64,000 nt of DNA from Botryllus schlosseri. Its lineage: Eukaryota. Positions 358 to 63,746 of this stretch are shown one piece after another. The stretch covers positions 15,314,001 to 15,378,000 of the forward strand of contig CM119378.1 of NCBI GenBank assembly GCA_051294905.1, read 5' to 3'. The notes under the pieces are model-generated. The model did no database searches and was not told where the DNA came from. It saw nothing but the letters and a program-made list of their open reading frames with translations. The translations under genes were made by a program, and so were the position numbers. The number at the start of each line of letters is the position of its first letter. Within the stretch, counting starts at the first letter, position 1.

Positions 358-612
358 TTTATTAGCAGTTTTTATCAGTTCAATATACACCACAAAATTG
401 CGATACAATGAAAAGATAGGAAGGTGTCGAAACGACTTGGAGTAGTCTTTGGAATCAGACAGCCACCTTGGCCAAGGCGATGTAAAGAGAAGGCATGCAC
501 ACTGAATGAAAAGTAAAAGAAGATAGTACAGAAAACAGCAAGCGACAAAAAAGGAGTGGCATGTCACGGAAGGCGAGATCGATGGGTCAGGTCGTGGTCC
601 GGTAATCTTGAG
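358..612 (-). mobile_element. 5'-truncated LINE 3' end (family E, tail type a)
   Basis: Reverse complement matches 62925-63175, i.e. the last codons of the LINE ORF2 remnant plus its 3'UTR (aagattaccggaccacgac...ttgtatcgca...tgaactgataaaa...gctaataaa). Confidence 0.85.
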
Positions 613-629
613 CACGGACTAGCTTCAAA

Positions 630-3135: not shown

Positions 3136-4050
3136 CAGGGTTGCCATACCGTCCTTATTTCTAAGATTTGTCCTTATTTTGAAGGGCCACATCTTAGAAA
3201 ACTCAACTGTCCTTATTTCTAAGAAATGTCCTTGTTTTCGACTTGCGTCCTTATTTTGTCTTAGTTTTAACAACTATAAAACTTCGATCGTTGCCCAGTA
3301 TCTGTGTTGCATAATATTATAAAATTATGCTTTTACGTCGATATTTTATGACATCATAAATGAAAGGAGCTCCGATGGCGTACACAGCACAGGCTTTGAC
3401 CTCGAAGTGGTGAGATAGATAGCTAGGGCATGTGCATGATGGCGTAGCAGTTTTGGCTGTACCAAGCTATCGCAGCGGACGCCATTTTAGCAGTAAACAG
3501 CAGTACCAGGTTTCTGAAGCAGAATAAGCGGTGGGGAAGGCAGCATTTATTGCGTATAACTGAAAAAGGGCGCAGTGCAGTCGACACTTGAGTTGAAAAG
3601 TAGTAAAGCTATAAATCATTGATAAATTTATCTAAATGATATTGTACATATAGCTTTAGCTACTAATAAGACTAAATCTGCTTAGTTAAAATGAGCAGGC
3701 GTACAAACGTTTTTCGCGGCGATTATGGGAGAGAATTCAAAGGTATCAAACCTGGTGAAAAGTTTGGTCACCCTATGGGGGACCCAAGACCATCGTGTTT
3801 TTTTGGGGAGGGGCTGCCAAGGTGCTGTTTTGGCCCAGAGCAAATGTAAACCTAGACCTGAGCTGTCGAGAGATCCATGAAACACTTTCTAATAACAAGG
3901 AGTTGCTCGAGCAGGTTGTTTCTGGCGAAAAGTATGGGATGTGATATGCCACGGCTCGTATAAATACAACGTATGTGCAAAAACGCTTTTTAATGCAAAT
4001 CTAATTTTTCGATTGTCCTTATTTTGGGGCCCATGTCGATGGCAACCCTG
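3136..4050. mobile_element. Non-autonomous hAT element, family I
   Basis: TIR cagggttgccat / atggcaaccctg; 8-bp TSD tgtatata / tttatata (one mismatch); subterminal gtccttattt repeats. Contains a family B 5'-end fragment at about 3765-3838. Confidence 0.85.
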
Positions 4051-4159
4051 TTTATATAGTAGCATAGTATCTTGTGAAATACATCCGAGCCGGAGTTATT
4101 TTTCAAACAAATGTCCGCAGTTACCACGGTAGTTCCATTTGAATTTCACGTACAACTCA

Positions 4160-4213
4160 TGGCTCCAACCCCGTTAAAAATGCACGGCTTCCGGGCTCCG
4201 GCTCCAAAGCCTT
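4160..4213. repeat. Right-end fragment of GGCTCC-rich hAT family F
   Basis: cacggcttccgggctccggctccaaagccttg resembles the family F right end at 51830-51881. Confidence 0.6.
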
Positions 4214-4681
4214 GAGTTCGACTACACTTGATCAAGAAGTAAGTAGGGCTGGGCAAAATCGAGTAGCTCAGTGATTCGATTCTGAATCACGTATTATGCT
4301 TCGAGTCGAGTTGAGTATTACTCATAATGACGTCATACCAGAATGCAAAATGGAAAGTTCAAGTATGTACCTTTTATGCCACCCAAAAAATATAATGCCT
4401 CTTATCCATCACATTAAAAGTACTTTAATGTTTTTCGACCATACCGATTTTATTGTAGGCCTACTTTGTGACAAGGTTGTGGGATGATCATGACTTCAGA
4501 AATGTGTTATCTCCAGTAACGTTGGCAGCTTTGTGGTATGTTTCGTGTGCTGCGATACGCGTAATCAAGGTTTCAAGGCTTGCACACTGCACAGTGGAAA
4601 AGAGTATCGAAACTATAATTTTCGTTGATAAATTAACCTTCAGTGCTGAGAAGCGTATAATTTCAGTACTCGAAAAAAATC

Positions 4682-5275
4682 GTCTTCCCGGTTCGATTCC
4701 CGTCGGAGGTTCATTTGGGCTCCTCTTCCCCCGCTGTCGCCGTTCTTATGGCGACAAAAAAGCCCAGAAAAAAGACCTGAACAAAGAAAGCACTGACAAA
4801 GAATGGAAATAACTAGTAGAAAGGGCCACGGCTTCAAAAAAGATCATCATACAAAAAGAACTGTGACATCGGGCACTCACCGAGCGAGATAGTGTAATGG
4901 TTATGCGTCCGGCTTCTCGAGCGTCTCGAGCGGTAGGTCGTGGGTTCGATTCCCGGCCGGGTCATACCAAAGACTCGAAAAAATGGTATCCGCAGCTATC
5001 CTGCTAGGCGCTCAGCAGTCACGGATAGCATGGAGGAGAAAAAAAACGGGGGCGCAGACTAGATGACCTCATGGGGCCGTATCGCAACTCCGTCGTCAAA
5101 GCATCTCGATGGTGCAGGCGAAAAAGAATATCATATCTCTCTCTCTCTCTCTCTCTCTAGGCCGAGGTGAATGTTTGAGTAAAGGATCGCTACTGATGCG
5201 TGTCGTTCGACATCCTCCTATCTGTTCGTTACATTGCATTGTAAGTTGTATGTGTAGCTTGTTCAGATGTATTGT
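4682..5275 (+). mobile_element. tRNA-derived SINE family L (5'-truncated), split by SINE M
   Basis: B box ggttcgattcc (4690-4700), then gtcggaggtt.at.tgggctcctc...aaaagcccaga...actgtgac..ggg.act, shared with about 7855-8035 (+) and 19925-20075 (-). Resumes as aggccgag after SINE M; right boundary approximate. Confidence 0.6.
4879..5159 (+). mobile_element. tRNA-derived SINE family M with a CR1-like tail motif and (CT)n end
   Basis: A box tagtgtaatgg (4890-4900), B box ggttcgattcc (4943-4953), body gggtcataccaaagact..aaaaatggta, motif cagactagatgacct (5056-5070), terminal (ct)n. Confidence 0.85.
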
Positions 5276-5529
5276 ACTGTACAACTCGACTCGAATCATT
5301 AAAATTAATATTCGAGTACTCGAATCATCGTGCCAGCCCTAGAAGTAAGACACCCGTTTTTTAATAAAAACGTATATTTAGCTGTACCATTTGGTATCCG
5401 TGAATATTTCACATATATCTACGGGAAAACATCGTTACATAACTTGCATCTTACATGTTGTAAGAAAATTCAGCACAGGTAGCCAAGAACAGTGATAGTG
5501 ACCTGATTATACACATCACACTCTCTTTA

Positions 5530-6010
5530 TGTATATGCCTACCATATACAATTATAGATCTATAACTCATCAATTGCCATCTTCATATCATCAGCCGATG
5601 TCTTCGACAAATCGGGCCAGTGTGCTTTTGCGTAAAAAAATCTTTAAGCCCCCGGCAGTATCGCTGCTTCATTAATTTCATTTTTTCAGTTCGTTGTCAT
5701 TCCAGTGTCATTAATCCGCTTTTGCGTGTCTTTCCGATTCTCGCCTATCGCCAGAAGCCGTTGGTATGAGAATAATGCTCGACATGCAGCTCCCTGCAAA
5801 TAGTGCGACTCCAACGAATCCGCCAATTACTCTGAAAATTTCCAAACAGATTACAGTCCGAGTGCTGCGTAATCGAATTGTAGACAAGGTCAGTTGATTA
5901 GGATTGTCAACTTACCTGCAGAGCGGCTGCACTAGTAGGAAAAGAAGCAAAATATTTGTCGTAGCCCTGTAATCTGTGACTACAATCTGCCCTTCTCTGT
6001 AGCGATGCAT
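5530..6010 (-). pseudogene. Possible degenerate exons, weakly resembling Cys-loop receptor exons 1-2
   Basis: ATG at 6010 reads MHRYREGQIVVTDYRATTNILLLFLLVQPLC to a cag|gtaag donor at 5916; acceptor at 5831; a stop-containing frame reads LKDFFTQKHTGPI...LMSYRSII. Similarity judged by eye and weak. Confidence 0.2.
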
Positions 6011-7854
6011 GAATAGTAACATGTAGGCGATATTAATAAATCCATAATATGATGCAAACAGCGACATCTTGAACTATAGGCTATATTTGATACATATGAC
6101 AATTGCACGACCCCTGACAAAAGTTTTCGAGAGCTTATAAGCTCTAACTATGCGCCTAATAGATGCTATATGCGTCTATTCAGCGGGCCGAGTTAATGAA
6201 TAACTCTTTCCATGCAAGACCACGGCCGACCAAGGTAGCCAATGCTACGAAGAAATGATTGCTGCCTTTGCTAGACTCGCATTGTGGTTTTGATATTATC
6301 CTAATAGTATCCGCCGTTCCGGCTCATTTTCTGTACATCATTTGGGGCCTCGCCATATTTCATTCATATCTCGTGTATGCGTACTGTTTAGCCTACTCAA
6401 ATCCATGAGAATATCCACTACAGTCTTCATTCTCACTTAACCCATGTTCATTTTTGTTCAACACTATCGACCTCGCCGCCATTCTCTATCGATGTATTGC
6501 GTTGTAATACGTTAGTGGCCAGATGTGATTGATGTGATGATTCAGGGCACAGTGCACATTGCACACTGCACAGTGCACGCAGTTTGTTATTATCTTATAT
6601 GCACTATATCTGACCAGTCAACATTGGCCAATCAATTCCGTCGCTCGTTCCCCGCCCCTACAAATGTTTCGGTGAGCAATACTGAGCAATGAGTTTAAAC
6701 AATGACCATGCGATACAGTATTAGCATTGCGACATCAGGTGAGGTCTGCTTGAAGCTGATGGTTAAATATGGATTGTAGAATGTGGAGTGAGAGTGCGAC
6801 TGGATGATCTAATATAGCAGGCAATGTTGATACATTTTAAAGATACACCGAAAACTCCTTCATTATTATGGTTACGTGATTTGGTGACGTGATGATACGT
6901 CGCTTCTATACTTTTTATATTTACATGTCTTAATATATCTATACTTACGTTCGCTACCCATACCGATGGTTTCTCAAACCCGTGTGGCGTATGTTATAAA
7001 ATCCTACCATACCAATGACCAATGTGCTTCAATGCGATGAAGGGCACTGTGCGATAGTAACCCGAATATTCATGATTATTGATTAACTGCGACCGACCAT
7101 TTAGCGAAAGATTACACTGTAACGTCATTTGCTTCTGATAGGAAAACAGTTGATTCTTATGCATTTCTGGACACCGGATGCATATATGTGAGTTTCAAGT
7201 TGATATTCGGGATCAGCAGCACCAAATAAGCCGGGTTTGACCGCATTCGTTTCGAAAGCAAATTTGTCTGTTGACTAGTTGTTACCGATACCAATGATAT
7301 ATCATTGCCGCTGCAGAACATATATGTTTACTAGCAGTACATCAGGGAAAATCCTTTTAACAGATCCAGATCATTATTGATAGCCAATAAGGTTTGACTT
7401 ATTAACTATACTGATCGTCGTACCGAGAGCGAAGGCACCATGTTTACAGTTTGACGCTACCCATTTCTCGCCAACATATTCGATTTAATTTCTGCTATTC
7501 GAACGTAGAATGACATGGGAATGTCGCATGGTCAAATTCACTGCCAAGCAAATACATGTAGGATCTACATTGTAGGTAGATGAACACCGTGAGTTTTTGA
7601 CAAAATGGAAGATATCATCTTGTTATTGTGCGTAAGGCTTCTGCCGCCCTCATCCAATTTCAGACTTGGTAATTGTAGTAGCCTGTATTCGTTGCGTGAT
7701 GTAATCGATAGTTGAACAATGAACATGGACCACACGACCATATTGAATTTATTTGTTCCCTAAAAATCTACAACTGCAAACCTTACTTCATTTCCAAACT
7801 TACGTCGCAAATCAAGATAAATCAAGTATGTTTGGTCTCGGCTCTGCCATGTTT

Positions 7855-8035
7855 CTATGTGTCGGAGGTTTATCTGGGCTCCTCATCGCCGATCCCGCTG
7901 TAGGCCGAAATACAGCGTCTTCAAAAGGCCAGAAGGAATAGAGAGCCGAACTCAAGGAGATGGCAGCAGAGACCAGAAAAAGGACGCAAGAAAGCGGAAA
8001 AAGACCTCAAAAGACGCGAACTTATGAAATTACTG
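7855..8035 (+). mobile_element. SINE family L fragment
   Basis: gtcggaggtttatctgggctcctc...cccgctgt...aaaaggccaga aligns with 4700-4780. Confidence 0.55.
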
Positions 8036-9424
8036 TGCGGGCGCAAATGACCCAAGTGTTGATAAGCGACAATTGTGTTAATAAAACAAACAAACAAACG
8101 AAGTATGTTTGGTCAGTGGCGTATGGGAGCATGTGCTGCCGCCCCTGGCTTTCGTTGAAAATGCCGTCCTGAGTAGACCGCAGTAAATTTTGAAATAAAT
8201 TCATGTTCAAGCAATCTTTTCAATAGAAATATATACAAATAATGTACCGAGCATCAGAAGTTCTATATTGCTTGAGAAAGAGGCATCACTGTCTTATATT
8301 GAGGCCAAAAGTACATGACAAAAAATGGAAAAAAATGTATTAGACAAATAAAAGATCAATAGCCGCCTCAAAATTGAACTTTTCGAGCTTTCGCCGAAGC
8401 AAAACCCGCAATAATATCCCCAAAAACAATTTTTTGAACGTAATCTCCTTCTATAGAAAGAATCGATGGAGCTGATAGCCGATGCTCATTGATCATTCAT
8501 GGTAAATTGAATACGGCTTTATCATTTTGAGCTTTGATAAACTCTTCTCACAGCTCGCAATGGAAACACCATTGGTATATAAGATAACGTGTCAGACACA
8601 GGCATAAATATGGTGTCGAATCTAGTAGGTGTGATTTACCTGTAAAACATCAAACGATGTTGCATTACGATCGAACGTGATGTCACTGCTTCGCACCAGC
8701 CTCTTAATTCTGTCAATTTCCACAGCCAACTCCGATTCCAGTCTGGATCGTAAAAAATTAGCTCGTGATTAGCCATCTGCAGATGTGCATTGTGCAGCTT
8801 CATTTTGCCGCCCCTTGCAGCCTGCCGCCCCTGGCGTAAAGCCAGAACCTACATGTGGCTGCTATACGCTACTGTGTTTCGAATTGGTTGGATCAACGTT
8901 GAACATTTTCTTATCGCACCAAGTTTCGGTCAACATGCGACGTCATTGAGTGCGTTGCCAAAACTATACCTGACTCTATAATACCTTGGCAAAAATGACA
9001 ACCCGATCTTGGCGGAATCTTTCCGTCTAGTCTCTAGAACACTAGATAATTATTTTTCGTCTAAAAGTCTGTATGGCAGTAAGGAGTACTCAAGTAGGTT
9101 TTGCCTACTTGTGATACTTATTTAGGTGATTCGCTTTTTAGGCATTTCTATACTTTTAACAGATTAGTGTAGGCGACACTAGCTACTTTTTCAGAATCTG
9201 TACTTTGTAAAATAAAAAGTAGTTTCGACGTATGATTACATCGCCTTTGTGAGTGAATTGCCAGACCAGCTGCTGCGCATAATAGCCCCTGTGGTAACAT
9301 AATTTATTATACAAATTGTACCATTGACCCAATAGGCCCCTCTTTCACGTTTTAACCACTGCTCGTGTGGTCTAGTTTTTATGTTGTCAGTTATCTGGTC
9401 GCGGCCAGCGTGAACATTTTCCGG

Positions 9425-9800
9425 AATTCATGATTCAATCTGGTCGACGATATTGACAATTGCATATATTACTATAGTTTTTTGTCCTCTCCGCCCGCGT
9501 GATCAGATTTACCGGTAAAGCTGAAGAAGGAGGTGATGTCTTTAAAATTCCGGGAACATAATTAATTATTATTAATAATTACATCTTCGGGCGGGCCCGT
9601 TGTTAGTGATTATTTGTCGCAAATTTCATACGTCTTGGTGTGTCGTGGCGTTGCAATGGCTGACACCGAAATGCCTATTTCTATAAATTATGTGTAATTT
9701 TCATTAGGGGCAGGTGTACCCGTATTAAAATCAAGACATCTAACGACTTAAATTTTAAAAAAGTTGAATATTACTCCAACAAATACCCCATAATTTATGT
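9425..9800 (+). mobile_element. Internally deleted family B fragment
   Basis: atcagatttaccggta...aataatt...acatcttcgggcgg...gtcttggtgtgtcgtggcg...ctataaatta match the family B core; no termini. Confidence 0.75.
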
Positions 9801-20075: not shown

Positions 20076-21834
20076 CGTAAAAATGAGCCATACATATTGA
20101 TATGAATATGCGATAACTTTTTAGAGAAGTGATAGGTTATAGATATAGAATGTTACGAGGTACGGGAGAGTGCATAATTTCAGCTGGACGGCTGAATCTG
20201 AATCTGTTTGTGGGTCAAACTATAGCCAACATATTTCTTTATCTCAGACTTCCGTGGGAGAAATACCAATTTATTGGTGAGATCGATGCATCAATCTCCG
20301 ACTTTTCGTTTGTTAAATTGCTTCGAACGCAGGCCGTAGCTTATCCATCCTGAACTAGAATATAGGCCTAATGCCCGTGCAAAAACTCCGGTAACTTCAG
20401 TGCAGCTATATGCTTATGGTACGGGCGGGATGGAACTCATCCGGTACGAATGATTGGAGACATAGAACTTCGGGTTTAACTCAAAATTGTTTTACGCTAC
20501 AATCTAATCAGCTCCTCAATCATTTCGTGCTCGGGAACTTCACAGAATAGATTCATTATCCAATGAGGAATTTCTAATTGGAATATATCCTGGAAGCAAA
20601 TCACCATATCATCGTTCAATTTTCTGAAATAATTGATATATGTTTCTCCGTCAAAATCGGGTATTCGAGCTGGACCGATAGCTCATGCAAGCTTGAGAGT
20701 TCGAGCAGTTCACGTGTCGCAAAACATCACTGAATCCCGACAGTGCCGTTTTCACCTTCATCAGGTTTCATCATTGCTATGACCGGATATATTCTACTCA
20801 TAAATTTTGCAAAATATGCTCCTCAAGTAGAAGCGATATCGTTTCTCGCAACAAGAACGCCGTGTCGGAGGCCTCATGTCGTGCCGTGTCGAATGCGCAC
20901 TGCGCAGTGGAAAATCCACAATCGTTTGAAACAGAGAATAAAATGACGCAAGACAGTTTCTCGTAAAAAGCCATCACACCTTGCGGTGACCAATAACTGC
21001 TTAAATACTTCGTAGTTCCCACAGCACGCAATGAACCACGCTTTTCAGGGATACTACTGCCGACTGCTAAATTAGCTCATTGAACGGCAGGATCAACATC
21101 GTTAAGTAACAATGGACTCTTCCTGTACAGCTGAATAAATAGACAGACGACACTAAACTGCCCTGGCTGAATCGATTCTGCATAGCCTATTTACTGCGAA
21201 TGTAGCTGCTTATTTATCAATCGTTTCTACACCACGCAGCAGTTGCCTTCTAAACCCACACCGCCTCATTTGCTCACACCGCCCCCTACCACCTAAGTTT
21301 ATATCCAGCGCCCCTAATCGCCCGTTTCATGGCCAGTGCCCTCTTCCCGCTCGCGAACACCCCCAGGGGGGAGCTGGCACCCACTTTGGATACCACTGCT
21401 ATAGCAGAAGAATAAAACACTCACGGCACACTCACAAGAAAGTTGCTCATAAAAGTAAAATTTACGCGGTAGTGAGACGGCTATTCTTATTATTACGTGC
21501 AACGAGGTTGCATTGGTAAAAACAGACCCGCATTTCGTCGTCAATTCCAAGCTGTCTCTCTCGTGTACAGGCTCAAATATCAGCCAAAAAAATATGTTCA
21601 CCTAGTCATAGAGATGCATGTGGCAATTAAATTCGTGCCTTTGTGCCTATCATGGTATAGGATTTTGAAGGAGACACACAAAACTTCATTATTTTTTGGG
21701 AACCATCAGCGATTAAAAGCGGGACGTTTCTTAGCCCAATGAGAAAGATTGCTTGATTCGTTGCTTCCAAATGGACTAACATACCCGTCTGAAGTTGTGA
21801 ACAACAAATCCTGGAAGGTCCAGTCAGTGACCTC

Positions 21835-23541
21835 GTGTTTAGCGGAGTAATTTTTGTTTATGAGTTGATTCAGGGCTCAGTACTTGGACCGGTCCTTTTC
21901 ACCTTATATGTCAACGACATTTTTGAAACCTCCTCATTGAACACCACACTGTTCGCTGATGATACTCACCTCCTCTCTTCCGCATCTTCGACGGCAGAGC
22001 TGGATGCCCTGACTGGTGACCAAATGCCCAAAGTCCATGAGTGGACGGCCCAGAACAACCTTTGCATAAACGCCTCGAAATCGCAATTGCTGACAGTAAA
22101 TTCAAAAAATAACCTAACCGTTAATATCGCTGGTCAGCCCGTTTCCAACACAGATAATGCCAAATATCTCGGAGTTTTACTGGACTCGAACATGTCCTGG
22201 AAGAGTCATATTCAGTCCCTAGAAACTAAATTATCACCGAAGTGCGGCCTGTTCTACAGCCTTGGGCGCTTCATGCCAGCATGGGTTCTTCTGATACTCT
22301 TTAAATCCTCAGGGTGGCTGAAATGCAAAGAGACGCTGCATGGCCCACTAAGGCCATACTGGAATGATAGAGCCTGTTTATCTACTTATGAAGGACTCCT
22401 GCTCAAAGGGAATCGCTTGGTGATCCCCTGTACGCTGAGACAAGACGTTTTAAGATACCTTCATGATGCTCACCAAGGGGTGATAAAATCCCGACTCAAT
22501 GCATCACAGTCATGCTGGTGGCCTGGAATTTCTAAGGACATTGAAGAAACCGTCAGAAATTGCGAAAAGTGCACGGAGCATCAGCGAGAAAAGGTTGAAC
22601 CGATGCTGTCAGCATCCTTCCCAGAGAGACCCTGGTTCCGTGTTGGTGCCGACTTCTTTCAATACCAGAATTCCATGTACCTGCTAGCCGTTGACTACTA
22701 CTCCAGGGACATTGAGATTTGCATAGTCTCCAAAACAGTGAACGCAGCAGAGACGATTCTGAAATTCAAGAAGATTTTCTGTAGGCATGGCATCTGCGAG
22801 ACTTTGGTCACCGATGGAGCACCTATGTTCTCTTCCCGCGACTTTGCGGCATTTTGCGAAAGCTGGAAAATTGAACATATCATGTCCTCACCTAGATATC
22901 CACAGGGGAACTCGGAGGCTGAGCGTGCCGTTCAGACCATCAAAAACCTTCTGCGAAAATGTGACGATGAATATCTGGCGCTACTCACATACCGCAACAC
23001 GCCATTGGCTATCGGCTACTCGCCGGCAGAATTGAGCATGGGCCGCAAACTAAGAACAAGAGTACCGTGTCATCCAGACGATCTTCTGCCCAAGTCTGTC
23101 GACCGAACCGCCGTGAAGAAAGCTGAAGCAGATTACCGACGCAGAGTTACTCATCGTGATTACAACAAAAGACACAGAGTAGTACCTGGAGATGAGTTCA
23201 AGGTGGGAGATCGCGTCTGGATTCCGGACTGCAAATCGCAAGGTGTTGTGGAAAAACTTGACACTGACACTCAACCCAGATCCTTGGTTATCAGAACTGG
23301 GCGTGGCACCTTCAGAAGAAATCGCCGAATGGTGCGGAGATACCAGACGGAGAATGCCCCGCAAGAAGGCGTCGACATTACCGCCAGTGAGGCAGCTGAA
23401 TTCTTCAAATTTCCCGATCAGGGAGGAGATAGCAGTTCGAGCGCTACTAGTGTCGATCGTGATGACCATCATGAGGCGGCGATAGTCCGACGGTCGGATC
23501 GGAACAGAACCGCACCTCGCAGATACATCGAGGAGTACTGA
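21835..23541 (+). mobile_element. 568-codon chimeric ORF: non-LTR (CR1/L2-type) RT fragment fused in frame to a Gypsy-type integrase
   Basis: About 21862-22300: QGSVLGP...YVND...LFADDT...KYLGV..D.NMSW (C-terminal half of a LINE RT). From about 22310: GW...PYW, HHCC finger (LHDAH...CEKC), DDE core (GADFF, VTDG, AER; 35 residues between the second D and E), LTYRNTP, and C-terminal VGDRVW. Annotated start is GTG. Confidence 0.9.
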
Positions 23542-23721
23542 ATACTGATGTAGTTATAGGAGTAGTGTGTGTAAATATGTTGTGTTCTTCATTCACCTCT
23601 TGCCTGCCAATTGCTTCATACCTTTGTACCGCTAACTGCCTCAATTCGGATTGTTTATTGTCTTCATTCTGTGCTTTCGTCGTATATGTTTGTGCTGCTT
23701 ATAAGCATTTGTGCTTGTCCC

Positions 23722-23867
23722 GAGAAGGGAGATGTAGTGGTAGCTCTATGGCGCCACTAGGGTGTGACGACATCGCAGGTGCTTCGGTGCTTGGTCGTCA
23801 CTGAATACATGGCTGCTTGAGGACTCACGTCTCGTATATTAGACAGACCGTCAGTCACGCTACTACA
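23722..23867 (+). mobile_element. Polypurine tract and single 135-bp LTR
   Basis: PPT gagaagggaga (23722-23732) directly before tgtagt...actaca (23733-23867, 6-bp terminal inverted repeat TG...CA). No second LTR found in the window. Confidence 0.8.
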
Positions 23868-24058
23868 ACTATCTTCTTTACTTTCATTCAGTGTGCATGC
23901 CTCCTCTTTACATCGCCTAGGCCAAGGTGGGTGTCAGTTTCCATAGACTACTCCTTGTCGCTTCGACATCTTCCTGTCTTTTCATTGTATCGCATTTTTT
24001 GTGGTGTATTGAACTGATAAAATTGCTAATAAACCAATGATGATGATGATGATGATGA
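23868..24058 (+). mobile_element. LINE family E 3'UTR with (TGA)n tail, abutting the LTR
   Basis: Near-identical to 63005-63192; ends aataaaccaa(tga)n. Confidence 0.9.
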
Positions 24059-24763
24059 TTCATTAGAAGCGCGAAACGAATGAAAGACTTTCTTCGACTG
24101 TTAGCGTCCCAATTATGACGTGCAATCAGCCAACTCATAGGCAATGTCATGACCAGTTCCATTGCAATGGTCACATGTTCGTATAGCTATCAGCCATGAA
24201 GCAGTTAGAGTGCTTTCAAGTCGCACATGTTCAGTGTTCACCTGCATGCCCCATTTTAAAACTTTTGAAGATAATTTTCAAAATTACAGAAAGATTCGTG
24301 GCACAATTGAGAATCCGTGGCGGCACACACAGTTTGGGAATCACTGCTCCATAGTTATATGATGAGGGAATGTGAGTTCGTCATCTACACTACATATACT
24401 TAATACCTATACCCCCTGTAGTAGTGCAAAATATGCCTCTACGCACCAACCTTACATGTTTTTTTCGTAATCGAAATATCGCACGTCTGCTTTCAATTCA
24501 ACGTTCATCGATTTCTTGAAATTCTTCGTTTCGAATTAGATATAAACACAGGTCAGATTTCTACTAACTACAGAAACGATTGCTCAATGCTTGTTATTAC
24601 AACGCAATATATAATCAATAGCAAATGCGTTCACTATCAGACGTTACATTTCATCGCGTCATTAACCCATCTTCTTTGTGCTAGGATAAGCAATAAGCAG
24701 CATACAGATTCAATACAGGTTCGCAACCGGGTGAAAGTGTTTATTGGACGTTTTGGGAATAAG

Positions 24764-27700
24764 ATGACATCCTGTCCGACATCCTACAAGTCGTACTCGG
24801 AAGATAACGCCTTTCTGCCGCTTTTTCTCATTGTCTGCATCGTTTTGACGGTTGCGTGCAACCTCACAATGTTGGTGACTGTCTTCAAAGATAGTCACCT
24901 GGATCGCAACGGTCACTTGAAAGTAATGTGCTGCGTTAATCTTGCTGCTGGCGTGGTTGTCATACCGATGGTGCTTGCTATCTCTGTCTGGAGTGAAGTC
25001 GCCACGAATAATGCCTTTTGCAGTTTATCAGGCGTGTTTACGAATTCCCTTCACGGTGCTTCGATGCTCAACGTCTGTGCGATAAATTATGAAAGGTAAG
25101 ATATAAATTGGACAGAAAAATATCACCTATTGTGTATATATAGGGGTAGGGGTGCAGTGGCCGCACCCTCGACGGAGGAATACATCGTATATTTTGGGGA
25201 ATTTTGCCAGATATTTGGACGAAAATATTGAAATACTGATTTGAGATTTTTTCAAAACAATTTTATGGTATCATGTGTTCTTTATTTATAAAATCGGTAG
25301 TGAACAGTAATGAGGACAATCTTGTTAGGCTGTTAGGCTGTCTGTCGCGCAGATTATATAGAATTTGGGTAAAATCTGTATTGCATCCCAATGTTTCATG
25401 ATTCCCTTCTATACCAACGGCTTTGAAAGATGCCCGTCTCAAATTCCTATATATGTTACCTAAAAGAAGTGATTGTTGTACTTTCTGGTATTGGCTTAAG
25501 TTTAGTCGCAGTAACACATGGTATATGATCAAGGAAAATTACGAGCAGTTATAAGTTCTTCATCACCGTCTCCACCAATATGATCACAGACCGCTAATAA
25601 TATCCATTGGCATTTTTATAACCATTGTTATGGAATATTTAATTCTTATTACAGGTACCAAGCGATTGCACATCCGATGAAATTGCGGTATTCAAAAGAC
25701 ACCACCAAACTTTCCAAGCTGTGGCGCGCGATTACCATACTGCTGCCCGTGATACTATCCATCAGTCCTTTCTTTGTTATTGCGATACCATATGGGCCGC
25801 TGACCCACGCCCCGCTTTGCATGGTACTTCCGAAGACGACAGCTCTTGTTATTATTGGCTACGTGGACGTCTTCCTGACATTTGTTGTCCCCTGGATCGT
25901 GATGATATGCGCTGGAGTTGGTATGTTGCTTATTTCCATTTCCTGTATTGGATAGAGATAGACAAATATAGCCAGCAAATGTAGCAATTTCTTCTGATAT
26001 TGGCTACCTGTATATGTCAAGTCAACTCCCAGATCCTCACCATTCAACTGATATCCACGTGATAACTGACCCGGTACATTTACGTATAATATTCTTTAAT
26101 ATACAATAAAATATCTATTTCACTACGTCCCCAACATTGTTTTTTGAATTTGCCTCACGCTTGCCATAATCCTGGATACCCATGACCGCCTGAAAACTTC
26201 TGTAGGCCGAAACCTGCATATATGTTGTATAGCATACAGGCGATGTGAGTTATTGTTCTGGGCATGGTGGATTCACAATTTTGCTTGTGAATAGGATTTA
26301 GAGATTCTTAAGTCCATAGCGGAATCGCATATTGTTTCAGCCGGGCTTGAAACGACTGACGAAGACGTTAAATAGATATTTACTTTCGCAGGCATGTTGA
26401 CAATCTCGTGCAAACTGTCTCATTCGGTCGTTCACCCAATTCATGTAGCGCCAGCCAACGTGCAAGTTACAGAAAGTAAGATAGATATAGTATGGAGATT
26501 ACACTGGGCCGACTAGGGTGACCATAAGTCCTTCTTCAAGAGGATTTGTCCTCCTTTTCGAAGAAATGTCCTCCCTTCGCCCAAATATCCTCCTTTCTGA
26601 CAATTTGTACTCATACTCATTTTTAGCCTAAAATGCGAAACACGTTAAATTTTGGCCAAAAAAAATAGACGATGGGTTACACGGTAGTAAAATCTGAAAA
26701 CTGACCTTTTTTTAGTTAACACCAGATACGTACAGTAAAAAGGGTAATTCGGGATTTGCGTCAAAGTGATGACCTTTTCAACACAACAACATTTCCAGTA
26801 AATATTCCAAACTCTATTTTTTCAATTTCGGTCAAATAACTTTTCTGGTTTGAAAAAGTGTCCTCCTTGAGTCCTTTTCCGATTCCAAAATACTGTAACT
26901 GGTAACCCAACATTGTCTGTTTGTTATCATATTCATGGTGTTTCGACTACATTGGTCCTTTTAAACCAGGCCGATATACTTTATTTTAGATTCTGTATTT
27001 ACCGACTTGTAGCGCGGCCCACGCCTAGGCGTTTTTATAAGACAACCGCTTATGCGGATCACGTGGCGAGGAAGAACCTAGATAAACCTATTGTAGTGTT
27101 TCGTCGAATATAGACGGTGGAGGCCAAGTATGGTTAGAAGACAAAAAATAATGATCCAACTACATGACGAATTCTATCTCTTATTCTGCAATATTCACTT
27201 CAGACGTTCGTGTCCGAGGCCGCAATCGTAACGTGGGCGCATTTTCAAATCAGCGTAACAGGACAACACGAATCAAAAAAGCAATGCGAACGAGGGTAGA
27301 GCGGACGGCTTCGTCTCCAGCACATAATTTCAAAGCTCTGATCACCGTTGCTACGACATTTTGTATTTTCTCTGTATTCAACGGACCGTATGCAGCCTTT
27401 GTCATTACAGTTAGCAGCACGTTTACTTGTTCGTCTTCGCAGAGCACTAACCATCCAGCTTTGGAATATATTTTATGCGTGACTTGGCTAGCGGTCTACG
27501 CAATTTATCCTTTACTAAACGGCCTGACAAGCCGGGAGATAAGATTGAAGATGCTACAAATGGTGCGTAACAAGCTCAGCGTTAACATAGTGGATGTTAA
27601 TGAATTTGAGGGGTCAAGCGTGGCTAAATGGAACCAGGTTGACAGAGACGGATTGGAAGACCGACAATTATCCGGGAAGCTGACGAGCTTTCGCAAGAAA

Positions 27701-52137: not shown

Positions 52138-52639
52138 CCTATCTTTTTCTTTCAAGTAGTAGTGAAGTGACCCGAGTCTGATCTGTGATTTATTAACCGT
52201 CATCAAGGTTTACTTTACAGAGAGTCTTTATTTTCATCCAACAATATAGGCTATTTCATTATAAAACATGATAATTCATCTTCGTTCAGAATTTCTATCA
52301 CCGTGTTGAAAGTATAATTTGACTGATGTGCATTTGATGTCATTTGGTACTGGCATCAGACGATAGGTTATCTTTAGTGCTCTGTGTGATACGTAGTGTA
52401 CGAGCATAGCAATTTACAGCGTAGCATCGAGCACCAGCCATAAGAATTGCAATGTGTTTTATGTTACTCGTCCTTAGTAACTTGTGCTAAAATTATGTTG
52501 CTTTGTCTTAGCTGCTTACCGTTATCCTTCCTGCCAGCGCCCATAAGTGTCGTAAGCTGCGTTCCCGAGCTCAGAATAATTCGTGTGCCAGATTTTCATG
52601 ACAGTCGTTTTCATTCAGTGTGTTTGTGTGATGTCTGCT

Positions 52640-52785
52640 CTTTATTACATCGCCTTGGCCCAGGGGATGCCTGATTTCAAAGACTATTCCAAGTCGTTTC
52701 AACACCTTCCTATCTTTTCATCGTATCGCAGTCATGTGGAGTTTTGAAGTGATGAAAATTCTTGATAAAACTGAACTGAAATTGG
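52640..52785 (+). mobile_element. LINE family E 3'UTR core with type b tail
   Basis: acatcgccttggcccagg...ccttcctatcttttcatcgtatcgcagtcatgtg..gttttgaa.tgatgaaaat; tail matches the reverse complement of 62040-62100. Confidence 0.7.
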
Positions 52786-62012: not shown

Positions 62013-62165
62013 CAATCAATCAATCAATCAATCAATCAGGTTTATTAATATTTTCATCGTTTCAAAACATCACAAGACTGCGATACAATGAAAAGATAGG
62101 AAGGTGTCGAAACAACTTGGAGTAGCCATTAAGATCAGACACCCACCTTAGCCTAGCCTTAGCCT
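62013..62165 (-). mobile_element. LINE family E 3'UTR core with type b end and (ATTG)n tail
   Basis: (caat)n run then tttattaatattttcatcgtttcaaaacatcacaagactgcgatacaatgaaaagataggaaggtgtcg, sharing the core with 358-500. Confidence 0.85.
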
Positions 62166-62664: not shown

Positions 62665-63192
62665 AACCTACAATCTCCATAATGGTCGTTGCCCCGAATA
62701 TTTCAATGACTTCTTTACCTCTGAATCAAAAGCGCACAAGTACAACACACGCGCGTCAACGTCGTCCAAATATCATATGATCGACCGAAAAGATCATCGC
62801 TCTATCAAATATGCCGGACCTAATGTGTGGAACAGTATCCCGCCGGCCATCCGGCAGTCGACGAGCATGTGCACATTCAAGTCGAAATACAAGCAATTAC
62901 TACTAAATAAATACAGTCCATCCTCAAGATTACCGGACCACGACTGACCTATCGATCTCGCTTCCCATGACATGCCGCCCTATTTCTTGTCGCTTCCTTT
63001 TCCATACTATCTTCTTTACTTTCATTCAGTGTGCATGCCTCCTCTTTACATCGCCTAGGCCAAGGTGGGTGTCCGATTCCATAGACAACTCCTAGTCGCT
63101 TCGACATCTTCCTTTCATTTCATTGTATCGCATTTTTTGTGGTGTATTGAACTGATAAAATTGCTAATAAACCAATGATGATGATGATGATG
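62665..63192 (+). mobile_element. 5'-truncated LINE family E: ORF2 C-terminus, 3'UTR and (TGA)n tail
   Basis: PEYFNDFF...HKYNTR...SIKYAGPNVWNSIP..IR...FK..YK..LL parallels the C-terminus of the 46894 ORF2; stop at 62947; tail aataaaccaa(tga)n. Confidence 0.9.
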
Positions 63193-63746
63193 AGTACGCG
63201 GACGCATGTACTCCAAGATCATATAGAAGTGCCATTGCTGCAAAATCCAATTTTCATTTGCAGAGCCTCAGTGTAGTGGGTGCAGGGATTCTGCAGAGTG
63301 CAGACTGTTAATTGCGAAGTGGTAACTGTGTGCGTGTAAGTATCCGTCATATTATGTGCCAGAATATCCGTTCGTTCGGTCAGCCACCCACCGACTGAAG
63401 CGGCATACAAAATGTAATGCAGTATTTATCCTAACTATATAAGGATGGTATAGGAAGACTTGCAGCTAAAGTGCCTTACAAAACGGAGCTGTCTGAGTCA
63501 AAAATCATTTTTTACCTTACAGTCTGGCGTTGCCGTTGGTCTGTCATTCTGACCCACTGCGATTGATTTCGCAGTCACATTTCATTCCTGCATGGCAGCA
63601 GAATCTAGTACTGCAATATATCATTCGTATGTCATACCGTAGGCTATCGGGCTATGATATAGTTAAGGTCTAAGGTAAAAAAAATTTGTTTTAGAACTAC
63701 TATTTAGAGTTTGGGTTAGCAATCTGTAAGTTGCCAAGTTTAGACC

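What the first reader, a model, noticed from the sequence alone, without database searches (positions are those of the whole stretch)
21835..24058. LINE-LTR chimera: RT fragment fused in frame to an intact Gypsy integrase, ending PPT-LTR-LINE tail
Seen: one 568-codon frame joins the C-terminal half of a non-LTR RT (QGSVLGP, FADD, KYLGV) to a Gypsy integrase with HHCC and D,D35E intact (junction about 22300-22311). Then come a PPT, a single 135-bp LTR and, with no spacer, a family E LINE 3'UTR with (TGA)n tail. Known: LINE and LTR enzymes normally belong to separate elements. Inference, simplest model: a Gypsy inserted into a LINE 3'UTR and one deletion removed the LINE ORF2 end through Gypsy RT/RNase H. 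The unit has a LINE-type 3' end, so a LINE RT could copy the integrase cassette in trans. If it is multi-copy it would be a new composite element. The RT lacks its N-terminal motifs and is unlikely to be active.
Basis: partly seen in the sequence, partly recalled or inferred. Interest (0 to 1): 0.75.

Follow-up and report, generated by a model that had tools for sequence, protein, structure and literature searches.

The report
One-off LINE–Gypsy deletion remnant
A young LINE copy in a sea-squirt genome was hit by a young Gypsy-type element, and a 3.6-kb deletion then fused their leftovers into one open frame; it exists once in the genome, shows no transcription in the one RNA run checked, and is an ordinary piece of transposon wreckage.

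Summary
Window 21835-23541 is one 568-codon frame joining the C-terminal part of a non-LTR RT to a complete Ty3/gypsy integrase. It is followed by a PPT, a 135-bp LTR and the last ~190 nt of the same LINE with an (ATG)7 tail.

- The 2.18-kb unit (21873-24055) is flanked by a 7-bp target-site duplication, TGATTCA. A sequenced older paralogue carries one uninterrupted TGATTCA.
- The LTR ends exactly at its terminal CA against LINE 3'UTR sequence, which is the mark of an integrase-made junction.
- 550 bp of LINE and about 3.07 kb of Gypsy are missing.
- The deletion joint carries 5 bp of microhomology, ATCCT.

Both parents are abundant and young. There are about 2,600 LINE 3' ends and 46 Gypsy integrase copies, at 95-100% identity.

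The exciting reading, a new LINE-mobilised composite element, fails. Both junctions occur once in the 495-Mb assembly. In the one RNA run sampled, no reads carry this copy's private alleles and the unique flanks have zero depth. All three private coding changes are non-synonymous.

Read support for the junctions could not be obtained. Interest is low: a single-copy, apparently dead deletion product.

The parts
21866..21872 (+). Left copy of the target-site duplication TGATTCA. Its last 2 nt are ambiguous with the LINE 5' end.
   Evidence: Sequence. Paralogue L011 has a single TGATTCA at the uninterrupted site.
21873..22309 (+). 5'-truncated LINE ORF2 fragment: the RT C-terminal half from the QGSVLGP motif through FADD to ...LILFKS. 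It corresponds to positions ~615-1053 of reference copy L032.
   Evidence: 99.8% identical to L032. Pfam RVT_1 profile 120-203. No private substitutions against 30 copies.
22305..22309 (+). ATCCT, a 5-bp microhomology shared by the LINE end and the Gypsy start. This is the deletion joint.
   Evidence: LINE copies match through 22309. Gypsy copies match from 22305. Direct comparison.
22305..23541 (+). 3' end of Gypsy pol: the RNase H-integrase linker and the complete integrase (HHCC zinc domain, DDE core, C-terminal region), down to the TGA stop.
   Evidence: Pfam Integrase_H2C2 and rve. Same order as the full copy L062, RT-RNaseH-IN. At least 23 copies match full length at 95-99%.
23542..23721 (+). 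Gypsy 3' untranslated internal region.
   Evidence: Part of the 22305-23867 block shared with all Gypsy copies.
23722..23732 (+). Polypurine tract GAGAAGGGAGA.
   Evidence: Sequence. Same tract lies before the 3' LTR in L061 and L062.
23733..23867 (+). The only remaining LTR, which is the 3' LTR: 135 bp, TGTAGT...ACTACA.
   Evidence: Matches both LTRs of full copies.
23868..24036 (+). Distal LINE 3'UTR (L032 positions 1604 onward). It starts 59 nt after the ORF2 stop of the reference copy.
   Evidence: 99.5% identical to L032. About 2,600 copies of this segment in the genome.
24037..24055 (+). LINE microsatellite tail, (ATG)n read as TGA repeats. It merges into the right TSD.
   Evidence: Sequence. 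Same tail in L032.
24056..24062 (+). Right copy of the target-site duplication TGATTCA.

Best explanation
This is a single-copy, non-functional relic made in place by three ordinary events.

1. A 5'-truncated copy of a very abundant, recently active non-LTR (LINE) element inserted by target-primed reverse transcription into an old interspersed repeat. This duplicated the target TGATTCA.
2. A member of a small, recently active 4.6-kb Ty3/gypsy family integrated into that LINE copy, 59 nt downstream of the ORF2 stop. The integrase made the exact LTR-end/LINE junction.
3. One deletion of about 3.6 kb removed 550 bp of LINE and about 3.07 kb of Gypsy (5' LTR, gag, PR, RT, RNase H). It was joined at a 5-bp microhomology, ATCCT.

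The joint happens to fall in frame, which has a one-in-three chance. Both parent copies were young and still open, so the result is a 568-codon frame.

Shown here: the anatomy, the TSD, the missing segments, the microhomology, the copy numbers and the uniqueness of both junctions. Inferred: the order of events and the repair mechanism, which would be microhomology-mediated end joining or replication slippage.
For: **Single insertion with TSD.** TGATTCA lies on both sides of the unit. Paralogue L011 has one uninterrupted TGATTCA. In two further old paralogues (C6:26.04 Mb, C5:3.38 Mb) matches to the left and right flank lie 80-83 bp apart, which is consistent with contiguity, though their sequence was not inspected.

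**LINE parent.** Reference copies carry 550 bp between the two LINE parts that the window lacks. The family shows a ladder of 5' truncations.

**Gypsy parent.**
- In other Gypsy copies the 1.5 kb upstream of the 22305 equivalent is mutually homologous, while the downstream flanks are not. The window copy is therefore a truncated ordinary element, and 23867 is the true element end.
- The family makes 5-bp TSDs and has 135-bp TG..CA LTRs.
- Its pol order is RT-RNaseH-IN.

**Deletion joint.** The ATCCT overlap is seen.

**Single copy.** 100-bp queries across each junction give a full-length match only at the window. 32-nt junction patterns with up to 3 mismatches occur once each.

**No sign of use.**
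- Private changes of this copy are 3 of 3 non-synonymous in the integrase, plus two indels.
- In RNA run X23, at the window-private positions 22484, 22637, 23677, 23681 and 23938, every read carries the family letter and none the window's.
- RNA depth in the unique flanks is zero.
Against: - No read or contig was shown to bridge either junction. The short-read contigs of X4 break at the repeat borders and do not display the window-private alleles, so assembly correctness rests on the coherence of the structure.
- No intermediate allele was found, whether LINE only or LINE with a full Gypsy, so the order of events is inferred.
- The lost 5' TSD of the Gypsy cannot be checked.
- A second locus, L005/L061, has a full Gypsy inserted in a LINE at GGCTC (= window 21874-21878). 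That is 1-3 nt from the window LINE's 5' end, an unexplained near-coincidence.
Confidence: 0.8

Rival explanations
1. The chimera formed at another locus and was then copied here as one RNA by the LINE machinery in trans. It would have been recognised through its LINE 3'UTR and tail and 5'-truncated at the QGS motif. This makes it a LINE-mobilised integrase cassette whose master copy is missing from this assembly.
For: The whole unit has a LINE-type 3' end, a microsatellite tail and a clean 7-bp TSD. That is exactly what a retrocopy would show. The LINE family is very recently active, with about 2,600 copies at 98-100% identity.
Against: Neither junction exists anywhere else in 495 Mb, although copies this young should still be recognisable. 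The same TSD is equally expected from the initial LINE insertion, so this model needs an extra, unseen locus.
Confidence: 0.09
2. Template switching during a single TPRT event. The LINE RT started on an RNA ending in the LINE tail that already contained Gypsy IN-LTR. It then jumped at ATCCT to a LINE RNA and copied the RT region.
For: Five-nucleotide microhomology at the 22305-22309 joint is typical of RT template jumps as well as of DNA repair.
Against: The template RNA would have to come from a locus carrying the LTR-end/LINE-1604 junction, and that junction is unique to the window. The full U5 end of the LTR is present, so genuine Gypsy mRNA, which ends in R, cannot be the template (established LTR-retroelement biology).
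Confidence: 0.04
3. Assembly artefact: a false join between repeat copies.
For: Both parts are high-copy repeats. No bridging read or contig could be displayed, and X4 contigs lack the window-private alleles.
Against: Both joints sit at biologically exact positions, namely the LTR terminal CA and a microhomology. The unit is framed by a perfect TSD in unique flanks that are present in the short-read contigs (X4 contig 21519-21873, depth about 11). The piece is only 2.2 kb, well within single long reads.
Confidence: 0.04
4. A domesticated or functional RT-tail::integrase fusion gene.
For: A long open frame with an intact HHCC and DDE integrase.
Against: There is no ATG upstream of the RT fragment, and the frame opens inside the flanking old repeat. 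RNA depth in the flanks is zero and no RNA reads carry this copy's alleles. The 3 private coding changes are all non-synonymous. The frame is open simply because both parents are less than 1% diverged from active copies.
Confidence: 0.02

Closest known systems
Nested transposon insertions trimmed by microhomology-mediated deletion (general phenomenon in eukaryotic genomes)
   Same: One element sits inside another, with exact element termini on one side. There is an internal deletion joint with a few bases of microhomology, a single copy, and no function.
   Different: Nothing essential. The only unusual point is that the joint is in frame, so the two pol fragments read as one ORF.
SVA / LAVA composite retrotransposons of hominoids (PMC3287187, PMC7353768)
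   Same: A unit containing a fragment of an LTR element together with a 3' end that a LINE machinery can use.
   Different: SVA and LAVA are multi-copy, transcribed and experimentally trans-mobilised by L1. The present chimera occurs once, with no evidence of transcription or of any daughter copy.
Ty3/gypsy (Metaviridae) LTR retrotransposons
   Same: The right-hand part is the 3' 1.56 kb of such an element: integrase, PPT and a 135-bp TG..CA LTR. Full copies are 4.63 kb with 5-bp TSDs.
   Different: The window copy lacks the 5' LTR, gag, PR, RT and RNase H, and cannot transpose on its own.
Stringent-type LINEs with a microsatellite tail (CR1/L2-like; clade recalled from memory, not tested)
   Same: RT ORF followed by a C-terminal domain, a ~245-nt 3'UTR, an (ATG)n tail, variable 5' truncation and short TSDs.
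   Different: The window copy keeps only RT profile positions 120-203 and the last ~190 nt of the 3'UTR. The endonuclease and the clade assignment were not examined.
Domesticated gypsy integrases such as vertebrate GIN1 (from own knowledge)
   Same: A gypsy-type integrase ORF without the rest of the element.
   Different: Domesticated genes are single-copy, conserved across species, spliced and expressed. Here there is no expression signal, and the copy is under 1% diverged from active elements.

Membership tests
Ty3/gypsy LTR retrotransposon (right-hand part) | Pol domain order RT - RNase H - integrase | tested here: met
   Full copy L062 has RVT_1, RT_RNaseH(_2), Integrase_H2C2 and rve in one ORF in that order. 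The window keeps only the IN part.
Ty3/gypsy LTR retrotransposon (right-hand part) | Direct LTRs ending TG...CA, a PPT before the 3' LTR, and a short fixed-length TSD | tested here: met
   135-bp LTRs TGTAGT..ACTACA, PPT GAGAAGGGAGA, and 5-bp TSDs GGCTC (L061) and CTAAG (L062). The window has only one LTR and no testable Gypsy TSD.
Ty3/gypsy LTR retrotransposon (right-hand part) | gag and aspartic protease upstream of RT | tested here: inconclusive
   The two upstream ORFs of L062 gave no Pfam hit at E<=0.01.
Non-LTR (LINE) retrotransposon (left part and tail) | RT of the non-LTR type, with many copies 5'-truncated at different points | tested here: met
   RVT_1 at 1.9e-35 in reference copies. 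A ladder of 5' ends is seen among 30 copies.
Non-LTR (LINE) retrotransposon (left part and tail) | 3' end with a simple-repeat tail and a TSD of variable length at each insertion | tested here: met
   (ATG)7 tail and a 7-bp TSD TGATTCA, confirmed against an uninterrupted paralogue.
Non-LTR (LINE) retrotransposon (left part and tail) | Endonuclease domain (APE or REL) upstream of RT | tested here: inconclusive
   No endonuclease hit in the 360 aa upstream of RT in L033.
Composite LINE-dependent retrotransposon (SVA-like) | Several copies sharing the same internal junctions at different loci, each with its own TSD | tested here: not met
   Each junction occurs once in the genome. The apparent crossing of junction 2 in L025 is a different junction in a ~80% related tail.
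Composite LINE-dependent retrotransposon (SVA-like) | Transcription of the unit | tested here: not met
   In RNA run X23, with about 6% of the run read, there are no reads with window-private alleles and zero depth in the unique flanks. One sample only.

The most novel reading that the evidence does not exclude
The chimera is a retrocopy: a Gypsy integrase cassette carried between LINE pieces and moved once by the LINE machinery in trans from a master locus that is polymorphic or unassembled. That would make it the founder of a LINE-dependent composite element carrying an intact integrase gene.
Probability: 0.07. Interest if true: 0.5.

Novelty: new member of a known kind. Interest (0 to 1): 0.12.

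Why it matters
It matters little in itself. It is a clean, datable example of nested insertion followed by a microhomology deletion in a genome where both a LINE (about 2,600 copies at 98-100% identity) and a small Gypsy family (46 copies, some with identical LTRs) appear recently active.

It is useful for annotation, because the 568-codon ORF should not be called a gene. It also shows that in-frame RT-integrase fusions can arise trivially. Had it been multi-copy it would have been a new composite retroelement, but it is not.

Tried and rejected
1. **Shared origin with locus L005/L061 (C8:10.42 Mb).** There a full Gypsy is followed directly by the same LINE from window position 21874. I considered circular permutation, read-through RNA and template jumps. 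I rejected them for three reasons:
   - L061 is a plain Gypsy insertion into a LINE with its own 5-bp TSD GGCTC.
   - The window's LINE carries at least one more LINE base upstream (G at 21873).
   - The window's Gypsy piece shares 5 derived variants with L002 and none with L005.

   The 1-3 nt near-coincidence is left as chance.

2. **The many Gypsy matches starting exactly at 22305.** This could have meant a 1.56-kb mobile unit. I rejected it because the upstream flanks of those copies are homologous to each other, so they are full elements and the boundary belongs to the window only. The same artefact made the LINE look like a 1.79-kb element with a fixed 5' end, which one search corrected.

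3. **L025 aligning across junction 2.** This is a different junction, 95% in the Gypsy part and about 80% in a related SINE/LINE tail, with about 45 non-homologous bases after the LTR.

4. **Read support.** Read laying on X4, X19, X15 and X23 displayed no bridging contig or read. Loose ends at 22309 and 23868 only show the canonical LINE continuing. The result is inconclusive for assembly validation.

5. **Relative dating of LINE against Gypsy by private changes.** There is 1 private substitution in ~600 bp of LINE and 5 in 1,563 bp of Gypsy. These are too few to order the events.

6. **Consensus sequences.** Column majorities were used only to count differences.

Full report
**What is there**

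The + strand of window 21835-23541 is one open frame of 568 codons. Pfam finds three domains in it:
- the C-terminal part of a reverse transcriptase (RVT_1, profile positions 120-203 of 205, aa 12-114);
- an integrase zinc domain (Integrase_H2C2, aa 197-250);
- an integrase core (rve, aa 280-356).

Read from the translation, QGSVLGP, FADD and KYLGV are present. So are an H-x3-H...C-x2-C motif and D, D-35-E residues (GADFF, VTDGAP, NSEAER).

The frame opens on GTG inside the flanking sequence, and the first in-frame ATG is at 22024. Downstream lie:
- a polypurine tract at 23722-23732;
- a 135-bp LTR at 23733-23867 (TGTAGT...ACTACA);
- from 23868, with no spacer, a LINE 3'UTR ending in (ATG)7.

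**The two parent families**

All matches start at 22305 only because that is the window's breakpoint:
- In the other copies the 1.5 kb upstream are homologous to each other.
- The downstream flanks are unrelated.

They are therefore ordinary full elements, and 23867 is the true element end. Full copies (L061, L062) have these features:
- a length of 4.63 kb;
- 135-bp LTRs, which are 100% identical within L062;
- a TGG... primer-binding site next to the 5' LTR;
- 5-bp target duplications (GGCTC, CTAAG);
- the pol order RT - RNase H - integrase.

This is a Ty3/gypsy architecture. A 32-nt integrase pattern occurs 46 times in the genome.

The left part (21871-22309) and the tail (23868-24059) match another family at 99.5-99.8% identity. 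That family has an RT ORF (RVT_1 at 2e-35), a C-terminal domain, a ~245-nt 3'UTR and an (ATG)n tail. It also shows a ladder of 5' truncation points among copies. A 32-nt pattern from its 3'UTR occurs about 2,600 times. It is a young, very abundant LINE.

**How the pieces are joined**

Compared with reference LINE copies, the window carries LINE positions ~615-1053, then the Gypsy piece, then LINE 1604 to the end. It lacks the intervening 550 bp. The three junctions read as follows:

- **Right junction.** It is LTR...ACTACA|ACTATCTTC, that is, the exact terminal CA of the LTR against LINE 3'UTR. It lies 59 nt after the ORF2 stop of the reference copy. A junction at the very end of U5 is what integrase makes. 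Gypsy mRNA ends in R, so it cannot supply this junction.
- **Left junction.** It carries 5 bp, ATCCT (22305-22309), that belong to both parents.
- **Outer boundaries.** The whole 2.18-kb unit (21873-24055) is flanked by TGATTCA at 21866-21872 and 24056-24062. The flanks belong to an old repeat family at 67-79% identity. In paralogue L011 the sequence reads straight through a single TGATTCA. In two further paralogues the matches to the left and right flanks lie 80-83 bp apart, which is compatible with contiguity.

The simplest history has three steps:
1. A 5'-truncated LINE insertion with its TSD.
2. A Gypsy integration in its 3'UTR.
3. One ~3.6-kb deletion (550 bp of LINE, the 5-bp Gypsy TSD and ~3.07 kb of Gypsy) repaired at a microhomology.

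The in-frame join has a prior chance of one in three. The frame is open because both parents are less than 1% diverged from intact copies.

**Is it a new composite element?**

No.
- 100-bp queries centred on each junction give a full-length match only at the window. All other hits stop at the junction.
- 32-nt patterns across each junction, allowing 3 mismatches, occur exactly once in the genome, with zero in the controls.
- One locus, L025, seemed to align across junction 2. Inspection shows a different junction in a ~80% related tail.

**Is it used?**

In bulk RNA-seq run X23, with about 6% of the run read, the unique flanks have zero depth. At the window-private positions 22484, 22637, 23677, 23681 and 23938 every read carries the family letter and none the window's. 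The RNA seen over the repeats therefore comes from other copies.

The copy's private changes are:
- three substitutions in the integrase, all non-synonymous;
- a 3-bp insertion;
- a 7-bp insertion at the stop codon;
- two non-coding substitutions.

The LINE parts carry one private substitution. The numbers are small, but nothing suggests constraint.

**Loose ends**

- **No displayed bridging read.** The Logan contigs of the probable source sample (X4) end at the repeat borders, for example a contig at 21519-21873. They do not show the window-private alleles, and contigs drop rare variants. The exactness of the joints and the TSD make an artefact unlikely.
- **A near-coincident second locus.** L005/L061 has a full Gypsy inserted in a LINE at GGCTC (= window 21874-21878). 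That is 1-3 nt from the window LINE's 5' end. I tested whether the two loci share descent. The window's Gypsy piece groups with L002, sharing 5 derived variants, and shares none with L005. The window's LINE also has at least one more LINE base upstream. I treat the match as coincidence.

**Comparison with known things**

This is a new instance of a very common kind, a nested insertion trimmed by deletion. The nearest interesting analogue is the SVA/LAVA class of composite, L1-dependent elements that contain LTR-element fragments (PMC3287187, PMC7353768). The defining features of such a family are shared junctions at several loci and transcription. Both were tested here and not met.

**Verdict**

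The composite-element idea is rejected and interest is low.

Noticed in passing
L061 (G000:C8:10418000-10427999) 3246-9547: A full 4.63-kb Gypsy copy is inserted in another copy of the same LINE, with TSD GGCTC. That is 1-3 nt from the position where the window's LINE copy is 5'-truncated. With L025 this makes three of about 46 Gypsy copies lying in LINE or SINE-type sequence, possibly more than chance.
   Followed up: partly
G000:C1:18712670-18863895 (one search list): Dozens of same-strand copies of the LINE 3'UTR pattern lie at about 1.9-2.9 kb spacing. This looks like long tandem or head-to-tail arrays of the LINE.
   Followed up: no
G000:C3:2692614-2693703 (one search list): Five perfect copies of the LINE RT segment (window 22256-22309) lie at exactly 259-bp spacing. 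This is a satellite-like array derived from the LINE ORF.
   Followed up: no
L025, L018, L030, L006, L013, L023: Internally deleted Gypsy derivatives have a 5' LTR 27-1,100 bp upstream of the integrase region. L025, for example, is LTR, 27 bp, then IN from window position 22432, then LTR. The family readily produces deletion derivatives.
   Followed up: partly
window 62684-63193; 358-620 (-); 52609-52769; 62039-62156 (-): Further copies of the same or related LINE 3' ends lie in the window at 97%, 87% and 75-79% identity. The tail family has both older and younger layers.
   Followed up: no
window 24587-25099 (+): A 170-aa ORF just downstream has a weak 7tm_1 (rhodopsin-family GPCR) match at E=0.008, below the Pfam cut-off. 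It is possibly a receptor exon or pseudogene.
   Followed up: no
window 21250-21872 and 24057-24350: The insertion site lies in an old interspersed repeat. Hundreds of candidate copies exist at 67-85% identity, and the 21250-21405 part appears to be a separate short repeat at 80-85%.
   Followed up: partly
window 22484, 22637, 22780: Contigs of DNA run X4, possibly the source sample, show only the family-majority letter at the three window-private integrase substitutions. This may be because contigs drop rare variants, or because the alleles differ between individuals or are consensus errors.
   Followed up: no
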